Below are positions 4,197 to 56,086 of a stretch of 64,000 bases of DNA, piece by piece. The position numbers were made by a program, and so were the translations under genes. Source of the DNA: Gracilinanus agilis (lineage: Eukaryota); the NCBI RefSeq assembly GCF_016433145.1, contig NC_058134.1:207503156-207567155 (forward strand), in the 5' to 3' direction. How positions within the stretch are numbered: the first letter of the stretch is position 1; the number at the start of each line of letters is the position of its first letter. A model generated the notes under the pieces. That model saw only the letters and a list, made by a program, of their open reading frames with translations, was not told where the DNA came from and did no database searches.

Positions 4197-4263
4197 GTTT
4201 TCATGAGTTCTGCGATTCTTTGGCATTCTTCCTTATCGTAAAACCAGATTCCATAAATGGACA
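4197..4263 (-). CDS. DCP1B: DCP1B coding exon 4 (67 nt; L-SIYGIWFYDKEECQRIAELMK-T)
   Basis: ttttttcag acceptor and GTGAGT donor. Contains the IYGIWFY motif and C-terminal helix of the DCP1 EVH1 domain. Frame is continuous. Confidence 0.98.
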
Positions 4264-10379: not shown

Positions 10380-12060
10380 CTTGATATCAACTCCTTTGGA
10401 TCTTGGTCTTGGGTCTCTTCTAAATTCTCTGAACTCTTTTTTGGTTTCTTGTCCTTTCCCTTCCTCCATTTCCCCACCTCAAGGTCTTATTCTTGGTCCT
10501 TTGGTCATCTCTCTACCCTTGTCTCATAGCATCAAGTATCATCTCTACCAAAAATGACTCCCACATCTTTATGACTACCCCTAAAGGTCTCCCTAGAGAT
10601 CTAGCAATGTATTTGCAAAAGCTTGTTACAGATCCTACTCTGGATATTGTGCCTTTGTCTCAAATGCAGAGGCTTTGTGGTACAGTAGAGTGCTAGACTT
10701 GGGAGTTAGAATGACTTAATTTCAAATCCTTCAGTGGCTTACTAGTTGTGGGCTCTAAACACATCACTTAAGCTTTTGGAACTACAATTTTCTCATCTGT
10801 CAAATGAGGGAGTTGGACCTAATGCCTGTGAGGTCCCTTTCAAGTCTAAATCCTTGATCCTAAGTCCAAAATTAAAGTGATTATCTTCCCTACAGAATTT
10901 CACTTCCCTATTTCTGCTGATCTGTCCAATATTATCTTACTCAGACATATAATCTCCATCTTTTTTAACTTTTTCTTTTTTAATATCCCCCTACCATCCA
11001 ATCAAATACCCAAGTCCTACCAATTGTATTTTAACAATATATCTCATGTCATGTCATCCCTCTCTACTCAACTACTACCACACTAGTTCAGGACTTCATT
11101 ATCTCTGACCTATAATATAAGAGGCTCTAATTGCTGTTACTTCTTCCCTCACCAAACCATCCTTTATTTTGCCATCCAAATATTTCCTAGTACTATCATA
11201 TTATATAAATTCTCTAATCAAAATTCTTCAAGGGTTCCCCAAAATCTACTGAATAAGATATAAACTACTCACATTATCCTTCAAAAGGCCTAATACAATC
11301 TAGGTCCAACCAAATAAATGTTGATTGACTGTTTATATAATATATCTTTCCACTGTATTTCATACTCTCTCCCACTTCTTATACATATTATTCCAGAAAA
11401 ATTAGGATATTTTCTACTTCTCCCTTCCCCCCAATTCCTCTTCTTTCCTTTCCTATCTTTGGCCTTTTTCCTATGTTGTCCCTCATGCCTAGCATGGACT
11501 CCAAACTTTTCTTCTCCATCTGTTTTGAGCCCCTCCCTTCTTTCAATGTCTGAATCAGGAAGTGCTTCCAGTATGAAGCCTTCCTCAGTTTTCTCCACCC
11601 TAGTTTAAAGTGCATTCCTCTTGTATAAATTACTTTAATACAAGTCTGCATCCTTGCCCCTTCCCTCTACTCATTAGTTTGTGAGCTAATACATGCATAG
11701 GGATAATTAGGTGTCACAGTGGAGAGAGTGCCAGGTCTGAAGTGAGAAAGACTCATGTTCCTTAGTTCAACTCTGATCTCAGACACTTCCTAGTTCTGTG
11801 ATCTTGACTAAGTCACTTAACCTGGTCTTCCTCAGTTTCTTATCTCAAAATGAGCTAGAGAAAGAAATAGCAAAGCACTCCAGTATCTTTACCAAAAAGA
11901 TCTTGAATGGGGTCATAAAAAGTTGGACATAACTAAAAATGATTGAACAACAAAAGAGGAATGAAATCTGTGTACTATTTGTCTTTAGAGCCCTTGGATT
12001 TAGAATAATGCCTTGCACATGGAAAGTACTTAAATATTTGTTGAACTGAATTGAATTATA
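10380..12060 (+). mobile_element. L2 ORF2/3' end with nested MIR3 (about 10670-10865) and MAR1 (about 11703-11955)
   Basis: Contains cctcaaggtcttattcttggtcct (PQGS.LGP) and tatcatctctac...gactccc (YHLY.DDS) RT motifs. L2 terminus aaatatttgttgaactgaattgaa. Confidence 0.8.
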
Positions 12061-12319: not shown

Positions 12320-13127
12320 GGCTATTTAGCTACACAAAATAGCTAAATAGCAACATAGTTTTAGTATTAAAATGGGATCATTTGAAATAGTCTTTTATTT
12401 CTGAGTAAAGTTTAATATGAACGTCAAGTTTAGTATCAGGAAATGCTAGCCCAAACTACTGGCCCAGTGCTAGGCAGTGAAACATTACAGTGTAATAATG
12501 AAGTGAAATACCTCAGGATCATTCCACCCCTACTTCCTGTTTCTTTCAATAAAATATTTTCATGATTTAAGCAGAATTCCACCAGGACCAATGTAGTGAA
12601 TTTCATTAATGTTAAAAGTTTAAAAGAAGTTTTCTGCCAAGGCCTCCATACCTCTAGACAAATTTGTTGCTCTTCCCCAAAAGAGATTATATCAAACTAG
12701 CTGGTGTTAGTGTATAAAAACCAGAGCACCTCATGCTTCAAGAAGGTGAGGAGCTGACAAGCTGACACAGGCCATAATTTTGTACTTCAATCCAAGTTTT
12801 TTTTTTTTTTTTGGATAAAAATGATCTGACTTGGGCAGACAGTGGGCACTACAGTAAAGAAGTAAAAGGACAAGAATGAAAAGGTCTCTTTTAGTTAGAA
12901 AAATGAATTAAAAATTCTTTTTTATTTAAGAAGAATTTTTACAGCAGAAATGGAAATGTTTACAGAAACATAAAGAATGTGATCATAGAAACTTACAGAA
13001 TAAGACGTAACAGACATGTTTTCTGTTTTTAAAACTTAAATTCGGAAAAATTCTGAAACAGGATTCAATTTTTTTTTAAATTTCAACAAAACAATCATTT
13101 ACATAGGACGATATTTGGAAATTTACA
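12320..13127 (+). promoter_or_regulatory. Putative promoter and 5'UTR of CACNA1C exon 1A
   Basis: TATAAAAA at 12713-12720, MCAT CATTCCA at 12520-12526, CCACCCC at 12524-12530, ETS ACTTCCTG at 12532-12539, and TGACA repeats near 12755-12770. No recognisable TE between about 12060 and 16390. TSS not determinable from sequence. Confidence 0.6.
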
Positions 13128-13263
13128 ATGTTTCAAGCTTTTAAGTCAACCACTCCTGCATATCAGTCACTACCTAATCACCTTCCAGCAGAAACAGAGG
13201 AGAAGTTTAAAGGTACTTTGGTGCATGAAGTTCATCTCAACTGTTTTTACATTTCACATGAAG
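13128..13263 (+). CDS. CACNA1C: CACNA1C (Cav1.2 alpha-1C) cardiac long-N-terminus first coding exon 1A, nested antisense in DCP1B intron 3
   Basis: ATG 13128 has A at -3 and an in-frame upstream TAG at 13104-13106. Encodes MFQAFKSTTPAYQSLPNHLPAETEEKFKGTLVHEVHLNCFYISHE plus phase-1 G, with a strong AAG|GTAAGA donor. Aligns to the recalled human exon 1A peptide MLRAFVQPGTPAYQPLPSHLSANTEVKFKGTLVHEAQLNYFYISPG. CACNA1C is the syntenic neighbour of DCP1B. Confidence 0.93.
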
Positions 13264-16200
13264 GTAAGAAAGTCAGTAATGATGTATGTAAAGAATAGGA
13301 AAGACCAGCTGAAGTTTATTGAATTGCATCTTATTTATATTTAAGTATATATATGTATGTATATATGTTATATTCAATCACAGTACAGATACTTCTTTGG
13401 CATTTACATGGGTATCTAACACAGACTTCCAATAATATTAAAGTTTGAGGCCTGAGGTACTACTACCTAATAAATATATAAACTCATATCCTTGTAATAT
13501 GTCATGCTATAGAAATTCTCAGATCTAAGGTGTTAAATTGTCAGCCTCAACAGGTGCATCAAGCATCTATTTAACTTAAAACATTCCTTCTACTTCTCTT
13601 TTAATTATTATGTAAAGAAGATGGAAATTTTAGTCAGTCTTCCAGGGTGAATTTATGTAGAGCAAGTCAGTTATGATTAGGCTGGTGATTTTATTGTTGT
13701 TTTTCTATTTTGCTGAAAAGACAAAAATATTCAATTTCAAGATGTTAAAAGCATGTGCACTTGGATTTTTAAAGATCATGCATTCAAAAACTTATTTGTC
13801 ATCATCTGACTCTTTGTAGTGTGACATACAACTTAACTGAAAGGTTCTTGAATATATAGTGTATATTTTTTATAAGTATCTCTACATAATCTGATCTTTT
13901 AAAACATCTTTGTATCCCCATTACTAAGTATGTGCTTGTCACATAGTAATTAAGCACTGACTGCTCTATATTTTACCCTAAAGACTTTTCAGTTCTCAAT
14001 CTTGGAAACAAATCTTTGATGTGGTTTGTTTATTACCTAATAAGGATCAATGTTGTTGCTTACTTAATTTTAAAGAATAGGGGCACATTCCTCTGTATTT
14101 AGGCAAAAGATAATATACATATACTGGTTTAGGAAAAGTTTTTCAGGACATTACAGGTGCTTGTATCTTGTTATGCTCTTTTCCTTTTTCACAATATTGC
14201 CAAAAACAACTGGAAAGAAGTTTTCGTGGTTGGCATACTGCATTCATTATATTTTTGTAGTTTTTTCTTTTTTGAACTAGGATTTTTAAAAACGGAGAAC
14301 AAGGCAATTAAATTTAAGATTCCCCAAGTCTTTGGACAGAGCCCTTGGAATATGTCTTCAAAAGCTCATTTCTTTATGAGGAAGTAAATAGAATGAATAT
14401 CTCAATATAAGAACTAAGAATGCTAAATCATTAATTTATATGTGGCTCTATATATGTACATATATAGACATATATATGTGTATATACATCTGTAGGTATA
14501 TGTATATATAAAATATACATGTATATCTGTAAAGAGGAAAAGAGAGCAGTTCTAATTGTTACATTATTTTTTAGCTTGTTACATGTTTAAAAAAATGTGA
14601 TTATGCATAAGGCAGACGTGTATATACAGACAGAGGTACACACATAGATACACTCTACTTTTAATATATATCATATATATACACACACACACACACATAT
14701 AAGTGCTTAATAAATAGTGCTGACAATTGATAATAATATAGTATAATATTTCTATTCCAAAAGGTTACAAAGTGTTTTGGAAAGTTCACAATGGTCAGAA
14801 GAATGGATAGTCACATTTTAAAATGAATTTAGCTTCCTTAAAGTTGACTAGGATCTATTTACATAACTTGTCATCTTGAAAGGGCACTTGCATTGCTTCT
14901 AAAAAAAAAAAGGACAAGGAGAAAAACTAAATGAGCTTCTGTCTCTGCCTTCTTACTACATATGCCTATCTTATCTTAAAGGATGTCTGGAATTCCCAGT
15001 GTTGGCAGTACACTTGCAGCAGTGAATGTTGAGGTCAACTGTTTTGTTGCCCATGCACTGACAGCCATAGATGGGAAATGAAGCCTATGCTTGGCTGGTG
15101 GCATGCTGAATTTGCACTACCAGACCATTCTGAATGTTTTGTACTGAGTGCTTTCCTTCCCTTCAGCACGTTTTAACTAATGCCTTTAATGTATTATTCT
15201 TTTATCCCTCTTCTTAGCTTTTCTGACCAAACAGGGGCATAATCTAATAAGATAGAAAATCTTTACTGGCCAGTGGCAAGCGACATAGCACTGTTATCTT
15301 TGGTCTCTGGGTCTGTTTCTTTTCACATGACATAGAGTTTTTACTATGTCTCACAAATCAACATTCCCATGTTCTTGAAATATCACGAGGTTAACAGTAG
15401 ATGTGGTAGTAGTTGTTTTAAGGATAATTTATAACCCTGAAAACTTTATTTAGAAAATGTGGTAGAAAAGTTGAATATATAGTTTAAAGTAAAGAATAAC
15501 CCCCTCCCTTACAAAAAATAAGTATAAGAACAAAACAAAACTACTAACTCAGGCATTTTACTAGTTTGGATTAAATTAGCATCCAAAAGATAGTATTTTC
15601 AAAATGAAATGTGGATTTGTTAAATGTTACAAATTTATACCAAAAACAAATTATGTCACTGAGCTTACCTAATCCATATAAAAATCCTTGGTTGTCAAAT
15701 ATGGAAAACTCATAGTTTGACAATATCCTCAAGTTTAGGAGGTCAGATTCTTAATCTTTCATTGTTTCTAGACTGTATTTGACATTGCTCTTCTAATTTC
15801 TATGCATTTCCAGGGAAACCCAAATAAGTGTATTATTCAGCAATAATCTTCATATTCAACTTTTAAGTCATATGATCTAAATAACAAATTAGATAAAAGC
15901 AATTTATCTCCCTATCTCTTATCTAAATTTTCATTTGAATTTTACCCATAAACTTATAAATCCCTTTACTTAAAAAATCATTCCCATATAGAAAAATCTC
16001 TAATAGTAGAACTAGTGTTTAAAGTTTTACAACATACTTTTCTGAATAACAGCCTGAGATATAGATATTGCAAACATTATTATTTCCTTTTCTAGACATG
16101 CAAATGAGGGTCAATTATTTTCTTTGGTATTTTTTGAGCCTCCTTTACTAAGCTGTTAATTCTCTTTTCATTATTTTCGTGCATGGCTGTTATTTCTTTT

Positions 16201-28727: not shown

Positions 28728-28855
28728 ATCTGGCATTCCTATATAGAAGAAATGGGTCCTGAAGTTGGAAATCCAGGTCTTTAGTGATGGGTTCTGTCCT
28801 ATTTTCCATGCTCAACCTATTCATAATTGTGAATCCATGCTTGGGAGAAGCTGAC
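28728..28855 (-). CDS. DCP1B: DCP1B coding exon 3 (128 nt; SASPKHGFTIMNRLSMENRTEPITKDLDFQLQDPFLLYRNAR)
   Basis: tttcag acceptor and GTGAGT donor. Frame is continuous with exon 2. EVH1 core sequence. Confidence 0.98.
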
Positions 28856-45564: not shown

Positions 45565-47760
45565 AATCAACAAAAGTTTATTTGCAACTTCCATATGCCA
45601 AGCAGTGTGTTTAACACTGAGGATACAAAGAAAGGTGAAACAGTCTCTGTTGCTGAGGAGATAATATGAAAACAACTCTGCATAAATAAAATAATAATCA
45701 CCATAGGGAAGGCATTAGTAAAGGAGATCAGAAACGTTTTTTTGTTTTTGTTTTTTTTTTTGTAGAAAGTAGGATTAATTGGGAAGCCAGAGAGACCATG
45801 AGAGAAAGGAGGAGGCAGAGAATTACAGACATGGGGAACTGTCAGTGAAAACACAAAGAATCTGGTAAGGGAGTATCTTATTTGAGAAACAGTATTGGAG
45901 GCTGGTGTCATTGAAACAAAGAGTATATGAAGTAGAATCAGGTATAAAGATACTGGAAAGGTAGTAGAAAGTCAGGTTGTAAAGGGGTTTGACTGTTAAA
46001 TAGATGACTTTATATTTGATAGGGAGGCACTGACTTTTACTGAACAGGAGGTTAACAAGTCAGATTTGTACTTTAGGAAGATTAATTTGAAAACTAAATG
46101 AATGATGGACTGAAGTATGGAAAGATGGAACAGAGAGATCAACCATAAAGTACTAGCCGGGTCAGAGAAAAGAAAGGAAAATATAAAAGAGATATTATGA
46201 AGGTAAAAATTACAGGATGTGGCCACGTCTTGGATATGGGAAGTAAGAGAGCTGAGAATGACACTGAGGTTATGAGCCTGGGTAACTCAAAGGATGGTGG
46301 TACCCTTGATAGTAATGGGGAAAAAAATAAGTAAGAAAGAGGGCTTAGAGGTAAAAAAAAAAAAAAAGAATTAAATATGAACACATTGAATTCAAGCTGT
46401 TTATTGAGACATCCAATTCAAGATGTCCAAAAGGTACTGGGGAGATGCAAGACTAGATATTGGTCAAGAGAAAGATTAGGGCTGAATAAGTTGAAATGGG
46501 AATCATCAACATATAAATGACAACTGATCCAAGGGAGTTCCTGAAATCAGCAAATGAAATAGAATGGAGGGAAAAGAGAATAGGGCCCAGGATAGGGCCT
46601 AAAGGCATGACAGTTAGTGGGCATAACCTGGATAAAGATCAGGAAAAAGGAAACTTTAATAAGAATAGTTAGATGTGGAGAGAAGTACCAGGAGAGAATT
46701 GACTCTAGTTTAAAGACATTTTGATTAGATTTTCAAAATTCTATGAACATATTTTTGTTATCCCTGGGTTTTTTCCTTCTCTTCAATGTATTGACTTCAA
46801 ACTAATTTTTCATTCTTTCTTTTCCCCTGGCAATAAAATGACTCTCAGAAAGGCGACAATATTAAACAGAATCATTCTGCTTAAAAGAATCTTGATTTAA
46901 ATACTGTCAGTTTTCTACATAAAAGCATAATTATTCCTACCTTGTATAAACAAACAGGGTTCCTTCTACATCAGTCTTCTCCTGCAAAAAACATACAACA
47001 AAATATAAATATATTTTCTCCATTCAAACAAAGAGTCATATATTTGGAAATCATAATCTTCTTATGAAATAAAATAAGCAGGCCTGAAATCCAGTATTGA
47101 GATCAATCAGGTAATATGTATTTATTAAGCATCTGTTATATGCCAGGTACTTGCTAAAAGTTGGGGATACAAAACCAAAATAGAATAGTTTCTGCTCTTG
47201 AGAAGCTTACAATCAAGCCAGAGAAGATTTTGTGTGTGTGTGTATACACACCCCTATGCAAATACAGGTATATAAAAAATAGGTCTAAGATAATTGTATA
47301 TTCTCTTATAAAAGAAGAAGCCAACAGCTGAGGAAGTGGTATCAAGAAAGGCTTCTTGTAGGAAGTGGAAAGGTGGGTTAGGTTCTGATTATGAAAAGTT
47401 TTAAATGTCAAGAAAAAGTTAAAGAGTCTAGAGGTTTTAGGGAGCCACTAGAATTTGAACAGAGGAGTGACATGGACACAGTGGTATATTAGGAAAATAA
47501 CTCTGGCAGCTGAGTAGAAAATAATTTGATAGTACAGAGAGACTTGAGACAGGGATAGCCATCAGGAGTCTACTGCAATAGCTTTAGTGAGAATTAATAA
47601 GAATTTGAACCAGGGCAAGTGCTGTGATAGTAGAGAGAAAAAGGCTGATTTGAGGGATGTTTGTGAAGATAGAAACAATAATATTTGCAACTAATTGATT
47701 ATCAGGAGTTAGTGAGAGAAAGAAGTGATGTATGATAAATTTAAAATGATCAAATGTTAG
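45565..47760 (-). mobile_element. L2 fragments flanking DCP1B exon 2 (about 45565-46700 and 47100-47760)
   Basis: Inverted L2 termini caatcaacaaaagttatt and atttattaagcatctgttatatgccagg, with purine-rich L2-antisense bodies. Confidence 0.7.
46941..46981 (-). CDS. DCP1B: DCP1B coding exon 2 (41 nt; EKTDVEGTLFVYT-R)
   Basis: ttttgcag acceptor and GTAGGA donor. Phase 0 in, phase 2 out. Peptide continues exon 1 exactly as in DCP1B. Confidence 0.97.
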
Positions 47761-49635: not shown

Positions 49636-49825
49636 TTTTAAAAAACCTTTACCTTTCATCTTAGAATCAGTACTGTGTATTGGTTCTAAGGCAGAAGAGT
49701 GGTAAGGGCTAGGCAATGAGGGTTAAGTGACTTGCCCAGGGTCACATAGCTAGGAAGTGTCTGAACCCAGGACCTCCCATCTCTGGGCCTGGCTCTCAAT
49801 TCACTGAGTCACCCAGCTGCCCCTT
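49636..49825 (-). mobile_element. SINE1_Mdo-type SINE with a short B-box deletion
   Basis: TSD taattaattctt at 49624-49635 and 49826-49837. Confidence 0.88.
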
Positions 49826-53759: not shown

Positions 53760-54560
53760 GCTCTGCCTGAAGCTACTGTAAATGTTTAGCCGCGATCAAA
53801 CCCAGTCTAGGGGGTCTCAGGCCCCGGTCCTGGTTCTGGGAGTGTTGGGCCCGCCCCCTCCACAGTTGGGACGGCAGCCCCTCCCCCCCACCGACCTGTC
53901 CTGTCCACCCTGGGTGGTGATGGGAGGGGGGGGGGTGCTATGCCGCCAGCTTCCTCCCTCCCCTCCACCCGCCCCCGCGGGGCTCAAGTCTCTAGTCCTA
54001 AACGGGATCCCGGCCCCGCTTCGGGCCGCGCAGGCCCAACCCCTCCCCCAGCCCAAGTCGGCCTCGGCCACCCCGTCGCAGCCTCACGCACCCACTCGTT
54101 GGCCCGATGGCCGAAAGTGTACAGGGCCACCTGGCTGGCCACATCCACTATGCGGTTGATATAGGGGTCGTGGCGCTGCAGGGCCGCCAGACTGATGTCC
54201 CGTCCCTTGCCCACTAGGCCACCAGCAGCTACCGCCGCCATCTTCCCTCCCTCCCGGACATCAACACGGTGGACCGGACAGACGTGGCCAATCGAGCGCC
54301 GAGAAGCGCGAACTTCCCCACAACTAAAAAGAGAAAGAGGAAGCCAGGCCCTTGATATACTGGTCCAGGGCAGGCGAAGGGAGCCGGGGGTCCTTCCCAA
54401 TCCTCAAGGATTCCCGCGACAGACATCGCTAATCGAGACCGACTTGTTTTCCTCTGGGGATTTTGTAACCATGGGCAACGGCAGGTCTAGACTCAGCCGC
54501 ATCATTCATCTCTTCTTTAGCCTGGCTGTGCAGCTACATGTTCGGTGTTGCTTCCTTCTT
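53760..54560. promoter_or_regulatory. CpG island / DCP1B promoter, 5'UTR and start of intron 1
   Basis: Abrupt GC- and CpG-rich segment in otherwise CpG-depleted DNA. CCAAT at 54288-54292. YY1-type AAGATGGCGGC (minus strand, 54234-54244) overlaps the start codon. Confidence 0.9.
54092..54241 (-). CDS. DCP1B: DCP1B coding exon 1 (150 nt; MAAVAAGGLVGKGRDISLAALQRHDPYINRIVDVASQVALYTFGHRANEW), start of EVH1 domain
   Basis: Translation matches the recalled human DCP1B N-terminus. ATG (plus CAT 54239-54241) in context AAGATGG. Donor GTGCGT begins at 54091. Lies in the CpG island. Confidence 0.98.
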
Positions 54561-55850
54561 TCACTTTTAAAAGGCCTTGGCCAGGAGCTACTTAAGCCTT
54601 TTATGACTATTTCAACTATTTTATTAGTGGCTTTATAGAGAAAGATAATTCTGAGCTCCATATCTGTTACCAAATATATAATCTCCCCATGCACCATTGT
54701 GAAAGGAAAAATTATTCTCACCTTTTCATCTTCTTATTTTTAAATTTGTCTCCAACCAAACTGGAAAGCTGGGCTCCCAGGACCTACTTTTCTCCCCAAC
54801 TCAATTCTGAAGCAGCAGAGCTATTCTCCAACTCAAAGTGAATTCATTGCTCCAACACTGGGAACCTTCATGTCCCCAGTAGATTCTACCCTTACTACTC
54901 TGTCTTCCAAATCTTTTATGCTCCTATAAGCTTTTTATCAGCTGCCACCTCCTCCATGACACCGTCATTCTTTGAGGCCCCTGATTAGTTATTGATGCTC
55001 TTCCTTAAATTTCCCTAGAGCACTCTGGATGGGCTGAGCAAACTCTGAGAACAACCCTGAGTATCTTTGAAAAAGATTTCCATTCTTTGAAAACACTTTA
55101 AGAAAGGACTTTTAGAGAGACTGCCCAAGAGGCAAAAGTATGTACTTTTGAATGATATACTAAAGATATAATTCTATCCCTATATACCTCTTTTGAAGAC
55201 TGGAGGAGAGGCCATCCAGCCTCAGAAACCTTGGATCTTCTTTGCCCTTTCTTCTAGCTAGGTTGCTGGTGGTGTTAGCACAGTTCTCATTCTATTTTTT
55301 GTAGAAGTGGTCCAGATCATAGTCCACTCCTCAAATATCTCTAGATCAGATGTGCAAATCTGTCTTCAGAAGGAAAACTAGTTTCCTCTGATCACTTTCA
55401 AGGGGGGAAGTAATCCTTATACTCATCAGCTTAGCTCCTTATAAAACACTAATGATTCAATCATCACGAATAGCTAGTAAGTCCTATTATTAAAAAAAGC
55501 ATCAAAGAGAAATTATGCAAACTAAAATATGCCAAAGAAATGCATAAAAATAAATGAGCTCTTCAGCTAGGAATGAGGTAGTGAATGGTTTCAAATTTTG
55601 CAGTAAAATACAAGACAAGGTTCATAGTTAAGAGCTAAAAGTGTGAGGGGATTTAAGAAGGAGAGAGAATAATCTCATTGATAAGAGTTAGCTTTCAGAA
55701 GTCTCTAGGACTATAGGCACTGAAAGATAAGAGACTTGATAAGGAAATGGTATTTTCTATATGTCTGTGGCTCTGATACTCTAGTCTACCATTCATGTGA
55801 TGTGATGGTCACCAGTCTCTCTTGAGTTCTTCTGTAGAAATATGTCTCCA

Positions 55851-56086
55851 GGGGGCAGCTGGGTGGCTCAGTGGATTGAGAGGCAAACCTAGAGACAGAA
55901 TATCCTAGGGTCAAATCTGGACTCAGACACTTCCTAGCTGTGTGATCCTGGGCAAGTCACTTAACCCCCATTGCCTAGCCTGTACTGCTCTTCTGCTTTG
56001 GAACCAATACACTATATTGATTCTAAGATGGAAGGTAAGGGTTTATAAAAAAGAAAGAAAAAAGAAAGAGAGAGAGAAAGAAACTA
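55851..56086 (+). mobile_element. SINE1_Mdo-type SINE with a GA-rich tail
   Basis: TSD agaaatatgtctcca (55836-55850) and agaaacacgcctcca (56087-56101), differing by three C/T changes. Confidence 0.88.

What the first reader, a model, noticed from the sequence alone, without database searches (positions are those of the whole stretch)
13128..13263. Hidden cardiac CACNA1C exon 1A nested antisense inside DCP1B intron 3
Seen in sequence: a 136-nt plus-strand coding exon with a Kozak-type ATG, an upstream in-frame stop and a strong GTAAGA donor. It is absent from the ORF track because the unspliced ORF is only 56 aa. Established (recalled): its peptide aligns with the 46-aa long N-terminus of the cardiac Cav1.2 isoform, the exon phase (1) fits splicing to CACNA1C exon 2, and the nesting within DCP1B is annotated in human. 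Inference: the long-NT isoform and its nested position predate the marsupial-eutherian split. An isolated first exon far from the gene body may be missing from the marsupial annotation.
Basis: partly seen in the sequence, partly recalled or inferred. Interest (0 to 1): 0.78.

Follow-up and report, generated by a model that had tools for sequence, protein, structure and literature searches.

The report
Marsupial copy of CACNA1C exon 1a
This is the expected counterpart, in this apparently marsupial genome, of the well-known alternative first exon (exon 1a) that gives the heart calcium channel Cav1.2 its long N-terminus; it lies antisense inside an intron of DCP1B as in mouse and human, so it is real but ordinary.

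Summary
An ATG at 13128 opens a 136-nt coding stretch that ends at an AAG|GTAAGA donor (13263|13264). An in-frame TAG lies 8 codons upstream, and the unspliced ORF is 56 aa.

It is not a chance ORF. A search of 1.84 billion proteins found eight short unspliced ORFs from other vertebrate contigs (E down to 3.5e-7). All end at the same G|GTAAG donor, and all keep a coding length of 1 mod 3. One of them (P0016, 57% identical, E 1e-16) contains an exact match to a published rat Cacna1c "exon 1a" qPCR primer, which gives the family its name.

On the minus strand, four DCP1-family exons with clean splice sites place the exon inside intron 3. A rodent-like contig shows the same antisense DCP1B exon 4 just upstream of its exon 1a.

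Conserved non-coding blocks flank the exon: a putative promoter at 12630-12800 and intronic blocks with GATA-like and CArG-like motifs near 15.0-15.4 kb.

No RNA run was available, so splicing to exon 2 and heart expression are inferred. I could not check whether the current annotation includes the exon.

Verdict: a correct reading of an already known feature, of low interest.

The parts
13128..13263 (+). Coding part of CACNA1C alternative first exon 1a (45 codons plus the first base of a split Gly codon; phase 1)
   Evidence: named link through the rat exon 1a primer
13264..13269 (+). Splice donor GTAAGA; GTAAG is invariant in all six aligned loci
13104..13106 (+). In-frame upstream stop TAG, 8 codons before the ATG
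12630..12800 (+). Conserved non-coding block about 330-500 nt upstream of the ATG, shared by all six loci. It is a putative core promoter or start region of exon 1a. It contains a TATA-like element at 12713-12719, canonical only in the window
   Evidence: the function is inferred
14959..15089 (.). Conserved intronic block, 79% identical over 123 nt to L005-L007. It holds two GATA-like sites at 14966-14976 and a CArG-like CCATAGATGG at 15065-15074
   Evidence: motifs read by eye
15180..15367 (.). Second conserved intronic block, 83% identical over 76 nt to the rodent-like L001/L002. It holds a GATA-like TTATCT at 15294-15299
54092..54241 (-). DCP1-family (DCP1B by synteny) exon 1 coding part: ATG at 54241, GT donor at 54091
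   Evidence: (PF06058 E 6.4e-9)
46941..46981 (-). DCP1B exon 2 (41 nt) with AG acceptor and GTAGGA donor
28728..28855 (-). DCP1B exon 3 (128 nt)
   Evidence: PF06058 E 1.6e-11
4197..4263 (-). DCP1B exon 4 (67 nt). Exon 1a lies between exons 3 and 4, that is in intron 3
   Evidence: PF06058 E 1.3e-5
54001..55000 (.). The only CpG-rich kilobase of the window (GC 0.52, CpG o/e 0.63). It lies over DCP1B exon 1 and is a probable DCP1B promoter

Best explanation
Window 13128-13263 (+) is the coding part of the orthologue of CACNA1C exon 1a, the alternative first exon that starts the long-N-terminus ('cardiac') isoform of the L-type calcium channel Cav1.2. It would be transcribed from its own promoter inside intron 3 of DCP1B on the opposite strand, probably involving the conserved block 12630-12800. 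It would be spliced in phase 1 from the GTAAGA donor at 13264 to the common exon 2, which lies more than 50 kb downstream, outside the window. Work on rabbit and human channels shows that the first 46 residues form an N-terminal inhibitory module. This module lowers open probability and is needed for the Cav-beta-induced rise in Po,max. Shown here: the exon anatomy, its homology and name, conservation of phase and donor, coding-type constraint, the nesting, and conserved flanking non-coding blocks. Inferred: actual transcription, splicing to exon 2, heart specificity, and the function of the marsupial N-terminus.
For: Anatomy. Homology: eight hits with E 3.5e-7 to 5e-4 in 1.84e9 proteins, all reading through the same G|GTAAG donor as '...GGK'; eight rodent-like ORFs of the same type, two of them already among the first eight. 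In alignment A1, conservation stops right after the donor. Name: the rat Cacna1c exon 1a primer from PMC10219890 matches L011 exactly inside ORF P0016. It matches L001, L002 and L012 at 20/21 nt. Window versus P0016 is 57% identical, E 1e-16. Frame: exon coding lengths are 136, 139, 139, 130, 130 and 139, all 1 mod 3, so all indels are multiples of 3. Variable sites by codon position are 15, 20 and 35 of 42. A contig from a related species (about 91-94% identical) lists only 3 changes in the exon, 2 synonymous and 1 Thr to Ser, against 20 in the 150 nt upstream. Context: DCP1 exons flank the exon on the minus strand. The same exon 4 lies next to exon 1a in L001 and L002. The literature states that exon 1a is used in heart, lies more than 80 kb upstream of exon 1b, and that Dcp1b runs on the reverse strand (PMC5008151). 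Exon 1a encodes the first 46 aa, the inhibitory module (PMC2151559; PMC5680263). Conserved promoter-like and intronic blocks.
Against: There is no RNA evidence. No run on record as RNA holds the stretch, and the one contig across it (X15, 12918-14024) is collinear with the genome, that is unspliced. Exon 2 of this species was not seen. No full-length, named long-N-terminus Cav1.2 protein could be aligned directly: PDB and Pfam have nothing, and the length filter hides full-length proteins. The window copy differs from the others at nearly invariant positions. Its last residues are His-Glu instead of Pro-Gly, it is one residue shorter, and the TxxYxP motif reads TPAYQS. If the transcript starts at the conserved upstream block, the 5' leader would hold up to eight upstream ATGs, depending on the start site.
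Confidence: 0.88

Rival explanations
1. It is a relic exon. The sequence is the orthologue of exon 1a but is no longer used in this lineage, where the channel would start only from exon 1b or 1c.
For: No RNA support could be obtained. The nearly invariant Pro-Gly at the exon end is replaced by His-Glu, and Pro of TxxYxP by Ser. Several upstream ATGs lie in the possible leader.
Against: The ATG, reading frame, phase and consensus donor are intact. The related species' contig shows few and mostly synonymous changes in the exon, while the upstream flank is far more diverged. The promoter-like and intronic blocks are still conserved against very distant loci.
Confidence: 0.07
2. It is a conserved exon of another transcript, for example a non-coding or antisense RNA of the DCP1B locus, and not part of CACNA1C.
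For: Exon 2 and the splice junction were not observed here. The exon lies inside another gene.
Against: A published exon 1a-specific Cacna1c primer, used with an exon 2 reverse primer in rat heart cells, lies in the homologous exon. There is coding-type constraint and strict conservation of phase. The literature places exon 1a at this position relative to Dcp1b.
Confidence: 0.03
3. It is a chance ORF in AT-rich intron DNA that happens to end near a GT.
For: The plus strand has 50 ATG-ORFs of at least 45 codons. Pfam, PDB and the word search found nothing.
Against: The whole-library E-values are 3.5e-7 and below for eight hits that share the same start and the same donor. The pairwise E-value is 1e-16. 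Third-position variation is enriched.
Confidence: 0.01

Closest known systems
CACNA1C exon 1a of rabbit, human, rat and mouse (long-N-terminus, cardiac Cav1.2 isoform)
   Same: It is a first coding exon with its own ATG. It has about 46 residues, a phase-1 donor G|GTAAG, and 54-57% identity to rodent-like copies. It lies far upstream of the gene body and antisense within DCP1B.
   Different: It is one residue shorter (45 codons plus 1 nt against 46 plus 1). The last two full codons give His-Glu instead of Pro-Gly. TxxYxP reads TxxYxS. The N-terminal MFQAF is shared with a second group of homologues of unknown taxon, not with the M(L/I)RA(F/L) of the eutherian-like copies.
CACNA1C exon 1b (also called exon 1), the short N-terminus used in brain, smooth muscle and heart
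   Same: It is the alternative first exon of the same gene, splicing to the same exon 2. According to PMC2151559 it is partly homologous to residues 6-20 of the long form.
   Different: It encodes 16 aa, is not an inhibitory module, and lies more than 80 kb downstream in mouse. It is not present in this window: there was no match to its primers or motifs.
Dcp1b/Cacna1c antisense overlap described for mouse and human
   Same: The DCP1-family gene is on the opposite strand, with its CpG-rich start downstream of exon 1a in CACNA1C orientation.
   Different: Nothing of substance differs. Only distances vary: exon 4 to exon 1a is 8.9 kb here and 2.7 kb in the rodent-like L001.

Membership tests
CACNA1C exon 1a (long-N-terminus Cav1.2) | Sequence homology to an exon that is named Cacna1c exon 1a | tested here: met
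   Window peptide versus P0016: 57% identity, E 1e-16. P0016's DNA (L011:505-525) contains the exact published rat exon 1a primer. The link goes through a primer, not through a full named protein.
CACNA1C exon 1a (long-N-terminus Cav1.2) | First coding exon with an initiator Met, encoding about 46 residues | tested here: met
   It has 45 codons plus a split Gly codon, and an in-frame stop 8 codons upstream. The literature gives 46 aa.
CACNA1C exon 1a (long-N-terminus Cav1.2) | Phase-1 donor compatible with exon 2 | tested here: met
   136 nt is 1 mod 3 and the exon ends in G before GTAAGA. All five compared homologues are also 1 mod 3. Rat primers imply that exon 2 starts GT TCC AAC. Exon 2 of this species itself was not seen.
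CACNA1C exon 1a (long-N-terminus Cav1.2) | Position far upstream of the gene body, antisense within DCP1B | tested here: met
   It lies between DCP1 exons 3 and 4 on the minus strand. No exon 1b or exon 2 is found in the 50.7 kb downstream. The literature agrees.
CACNA1C exon 1a (long-N-terminus Cav1.2) | TxxYxP motif (T10, Y13, P15) of the N-terminal inhibitory module | tested here: inconclusive
   Thr and Tyr are kept and Pro is replaced by Ser (TPAYQS). The motif is also not invariant among the other homologues: P0012 has Gln, and P0006 and P0007 lack the Thr. It is a functional feature defined in rabbit, not a criterion of orthology.
CACNA1C exon 1a (long-N-terminus Cav1.2) | Spliced to exon 2 in heart RNA; heart-enriched use | not testable with these tools
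   No holder of the stretch is on record as RNA. The only contig across it is unspliced and comes from a relative.
DCP1 decapping-enzyme family (PF06058), paralogue DCP1B | EVH1-type Dcp1 domain | tested here: met
   Exons 1, 3 and 4 hit PF06058 collinearly at profile positions 2-38, 54-93 and 96-116, all above the curated cut-off. The best PDB match is human DCP1A.
DCP1 decapping-enzyme family (PF06058), paralogue DCP1B | Being the B rather than the A paralogue | not tested
   The assignment rests only on synteny with CACNA1C exon 1a (literature) and on my recollection of the human DCP1B N-terminus.

The most novel reading that the evidence does not exclude
The exon 1a unit (upstream promoter-like block, coding exon, and an intronic block with GATA-like and CArG-like motifs) is older than mammals. 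The MFQA-type homologues on contigs L003-L010 may come from non-mammalian vertebrates. The marsupial copy would then carry a diverged inhibitory module (TxxYxS, His-Glu end) that may be absent from the current gene model.
Probability: 0.4. Interest if true: 0.3.

Novelty: already known. Interest (0 to 1): 0.15.

Why it matters
The practical value is mainly for annotation. If the gene model of this species lacks the isolated first exon, the cardiac isoform of Cav1.2 would be mis-annotated. The comparison also marks out conserved non-coding blocks around exon 1a: 12630-12800, 14959-15089 and 15180-15367. These are candidate heart regulatory elements of a clinically important channel gene. It further shows that the TxxYxP motif of the N-terminal inhibitory module is not strictly conserved outside eutherian-like sequences. 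None of this changes current understanding.

Tried and rejected
- Pfam and PDB (single sequence and profile) gave nothing for the peptide. The profile search returned only chance antibody hits, all with E of 0.7 or more.
- The word-index protein search with the 56-aa ORF found no candidate.
- The same search with P0010, region 49-95, was meant to catch spliced exon 1a-exon 2 fragments. It returned only unspliced genomic ORFs.
- Cluster look-up gave no names for the homologues.
- Full-text search for peptide strings of the family found no paper. Search for the run and assembly accessions found none either, so the taxa of L003-L012 remain unknown.
- Sequencing-run search: no holder is on record as RNA. 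The four runs laid were contigs of relatives. Only one contig crossed the exon and it was unspliced, so this is neither support nor refutation.
- The substitution list is truncated ('67 more not shown'), so the exon-versus-flank contrast is only indicative.
- Exon 1b, 1c and exon 2 motifs and primers are absent from the window and loci.
- Global identity of the 150-nt flanks is at background level (0.54-0.65), so conservation near the exon is confined to the exon plus about 25 nt before the ATG.
- The TATAAAA at 12713 is canonical only in the window; the other loci have TACAAAA-like strings, so I do not call it a conserved TATA box.
None of the contigs I fetched looked human to me, and I did not fetch the contigs of the MLRAL-type hits P0002 and P0008.

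Full report
**1. What is in the sequence**

Searches confirm the description.
- The plus strand has an ATG at 13128 in the context ACAATGT. A at -3 is favourable and T at +4 is not.
- An in-frame TAG lies at 13104.
- The open frame reaches an AAG|GTAAGA donor at 13263|13264.
- The coding stretch is 136 nt, that is 45 codons plus one G, so the exon ends in phase 1.
- Read without splicing, the ORF is 56 aa, ending at 13298.

An ORF of that size is not remarkable by itself. The plus strand holds 50 ATG-ORFs of at least 45 codons. The stretch 12601-13400 is single copy in the window.

**2. Is it more than chance?**

Pfam and PDB hold nothing like the peptide. The word-index search found no candidate within its length limits.

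An exhaustive phmmer search against 1.84 billion representatives gave eight specific hits, P0001-P0008, with E 3.5e-7 to 5e-4. A ninth hit, P0009, is a repetitive protein matched only over residues 20-42 and is probably spurious.

The eight are short unnamed ORFs from metagenome or Logan contigs. Each begins at the homologous Met, or reads in from upstream. Each ends its similarity with '...GGK', which is the translation of G|GTAAG read through. They are therefore unspliced genomic copies of the same exon with the same donor. A second search added six more rodent-like copies.

In alignment A1, conservation is strong from the Met to the donor and stops immediately after it.

I fetched contigs for five divergent homologues and compared the exon DNA.
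- The coding lengths are 136, 139, 139, 130, 130 and 139 nt. All are 1 mod 3, so every indel is a multiple of three.
- All six have |GTAAG.
- Of 42 ungapped codon columns, 15, 20 and 35 vary at codon positions 1, 2 and 3. That is the pattern of a translated sequence.

A contig from a related species (run X15, about 91-94% identical) is collinear across 12918-14024. It lists three changes in the exon, two synonymous and one Thr to Ser, against twenty in the 150 nt upstream. That list is truncated, so this point is only indicative.

**3. Giving it a name**

No tool could return a full-length named Cav1.2 protein with the long N-terminus. The link comes from the literature instead.

PMC10219890 prints the rat qPCR primers for Cacna1c 'Exon 1a'. 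The forward primer matches L011:505-525 exactly, inside ORF P0016. It matches the homologous exon of L001, L002 and L012 at 20/21 nt. P0016 is 57% identical to the window peptide, E 1e-16.

The reverse primers in the same table lie in exon 2 or span the junctions of exons 1b and 1c with exon 2. They share the string GTTCCAAC. This implies that exon 2 begins GT TCC AAC, the last two bases of a Gly codon followed by Ser and Asn. That requires a phase-1 upstream exon ending in G, which is what the window has. This step is my inference from the primers.

The literature also states the following.
- Exon 1a encodes the first 46 residues of the long-N-terminus isoform, and exon 1b encodes 16 (PMC5680263; PMC2151559).
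- Exon 1a is the dominant first exon in cardiomyocytes.
- In mouse it lies more than 80 kb upstream of exon 1b, with Dcp1b on the reverse strand (PMC5008151).

From memory, the human and rabbit long N-termini align with the window peptide in the same way. That is recollection, not a test.

**4. The host gene**

The minus strand carries four exons with AG/GT boundaries that join in frame:

| Exon | Window coordinates (minus strand) |
|---|---|
| 1 | 54241-54092 |
| 2 | 46981-46941 |
| 3 | 28855-28728 |
| 4 | 4263-4197 |

Exons 1, 3 and 4 hit Pfam PF06058 (Dcp1-like decapping family) collinearly, at profile positions 2-38, 54-93 and 96-116, all above the curated cut-off. The nearest solved structure is human DCP1A. 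The gene is thus a DCP1 paralogue, DCP1B by synteny.

The only CpG-rich kilobase of the window (54001-55000) lies over its first exon.

In the rodent-like contig L001/L002, a 95%-identical DCP1B exon 4 lies antisense 2.7 kb upstream of exon 1a. The nesting is therefore shared. The more divergent contigs (L003-L010) are too short, or lack the exon, so nesting there is unknown.

**5. Surroundings**

Three conserved non-coding blocks flank the exon.
- **12630-12800.** This block is conserved in all six loci. It lies 330-500 nt upstream of the ATG and includes an invariant AGGTGA-GA-CTGAC core. I read it as the promoter or start region of exon 1a; that is an inference. If transcription starts there, the leader carries up to eight upstream ATGs, depending on the start site, which is odd.
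- **14959-15089.** This intronic block is 79% identical over 123 nt to L005-L007 (E 1.6e-21), which is stronger than the exon itself. It carries two GATA-like sites and a CArG-like CCATAGATGG; L003 and L005 have a perfect CCATAAATGG.
- **15180-15367.** This block is 83% identical over 76 nt to the rodent-like loci and has another GATA-like site.

No ORF or splice pattern suggests that these blocks are coding. GATA and SRF sites would fit a heart or muscle enhancer, but I read the motifs by eye.

**6. How it most likely works**

The sequence of events I propose is as follows.
- A promoter inside DCP1B intron 3 drives transcription on the plus strand.
- The first exon supplies the ATG and 45 residues.
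- The GTAAGA donor is joined to exon 2, more than 50 kb away. Neither exon 1b nor exon 2 is in the window.

In rabbit channels the first 46 residues, and specifically residues 1-20, form an inhibitory module. It lowers Po,max and is required for the Cav-beta-induced increase.

The window copy keeps Thr and Tyr of the TxxYxP motif but has Ser for Pro. It is one residue shorter and ends in His-Glu, where nearly all others have Pro-Gly. Whether it still inhibits is unknown.

**7. What could not be done**
- No run on record as RNA holds the stretch. The laid runs were contigs of relatives, and no spliced form appeared.
- The annotation of this genome cannot be consulted with these tools.
- The taxa of the homologous contigs are unknown.
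- The marsupial origin of the window rests on an earlier unchecked note that calls the genome opossum, and on a MIR/Mar1-like SINE at about 11.7-11.97 kb that I recognise from memory.

**8. Verdict**

The observation and the interpretation are both right. The feature is the orthologue of a long-known exon in a long-known arrangement, so it is already known and of low interest. The modest additions are the evidence that the exon unit is deeply conserved, with fixed phase and donor, and the three conserved non-coding blocks.

Noticed in passing
window 14959-15089 and 15180-15367: These are deeply conserved intronic non-coding blocks 1.7-2.1 kb downstream of exon 1a. The first matches L005-L007 at 79% over 123 nt (E 1.6e-21), better than the exon itself. 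It carries two GATA-like sites and a CArG-like box, so it is a possible heart or muscle enhancer.
   Followed up: partly
window 12630-12800: This is a conserved block of about 170 nt upstream of exon 1a, present in all six compared loci. Its core is AGGTGA-GA-CTGAC. The AAG|GTGAGG at 12741-12749 also resembles a splice donor, and CTGAC resembles a branch point. Its role as promoter, start site or splice signal is therefore open.
   Followed up: partly
window 12733-13016: Eight upstream ATGs lie between the conserved upstream block and the exon 1a start codon. That is unusual for a 5' leader if transcription starts at the block.
   Followed up: no
window about 11700-11970: A MIR/Mar1-like SINE (AAGTCACTTAACC...CTCAGTTTC core) lies here, at very high summed depth in all four runs of related species. 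Weaker copies lie at 55903-55966 and 49721-49764.
   Followed up: partly
L003:8629-9132, L006:3867-4478, L007:4434-4958: In the divergent (MFQA-type) contigs, the gene caller placed a 167-203 aa ORF directly upstream of exon 1a on the same strand, over the conserved upstream block. It is probably spurious, but I did not examine it.
   Followed up: no
P0006 (L005-L007): This exon 1a homologue is seen in 156 blocks of the collection (JGI, ENA, Logan). It therefore comes from a host species that very often contaminates metagenomes. The species was not identified.
   Followed up: no
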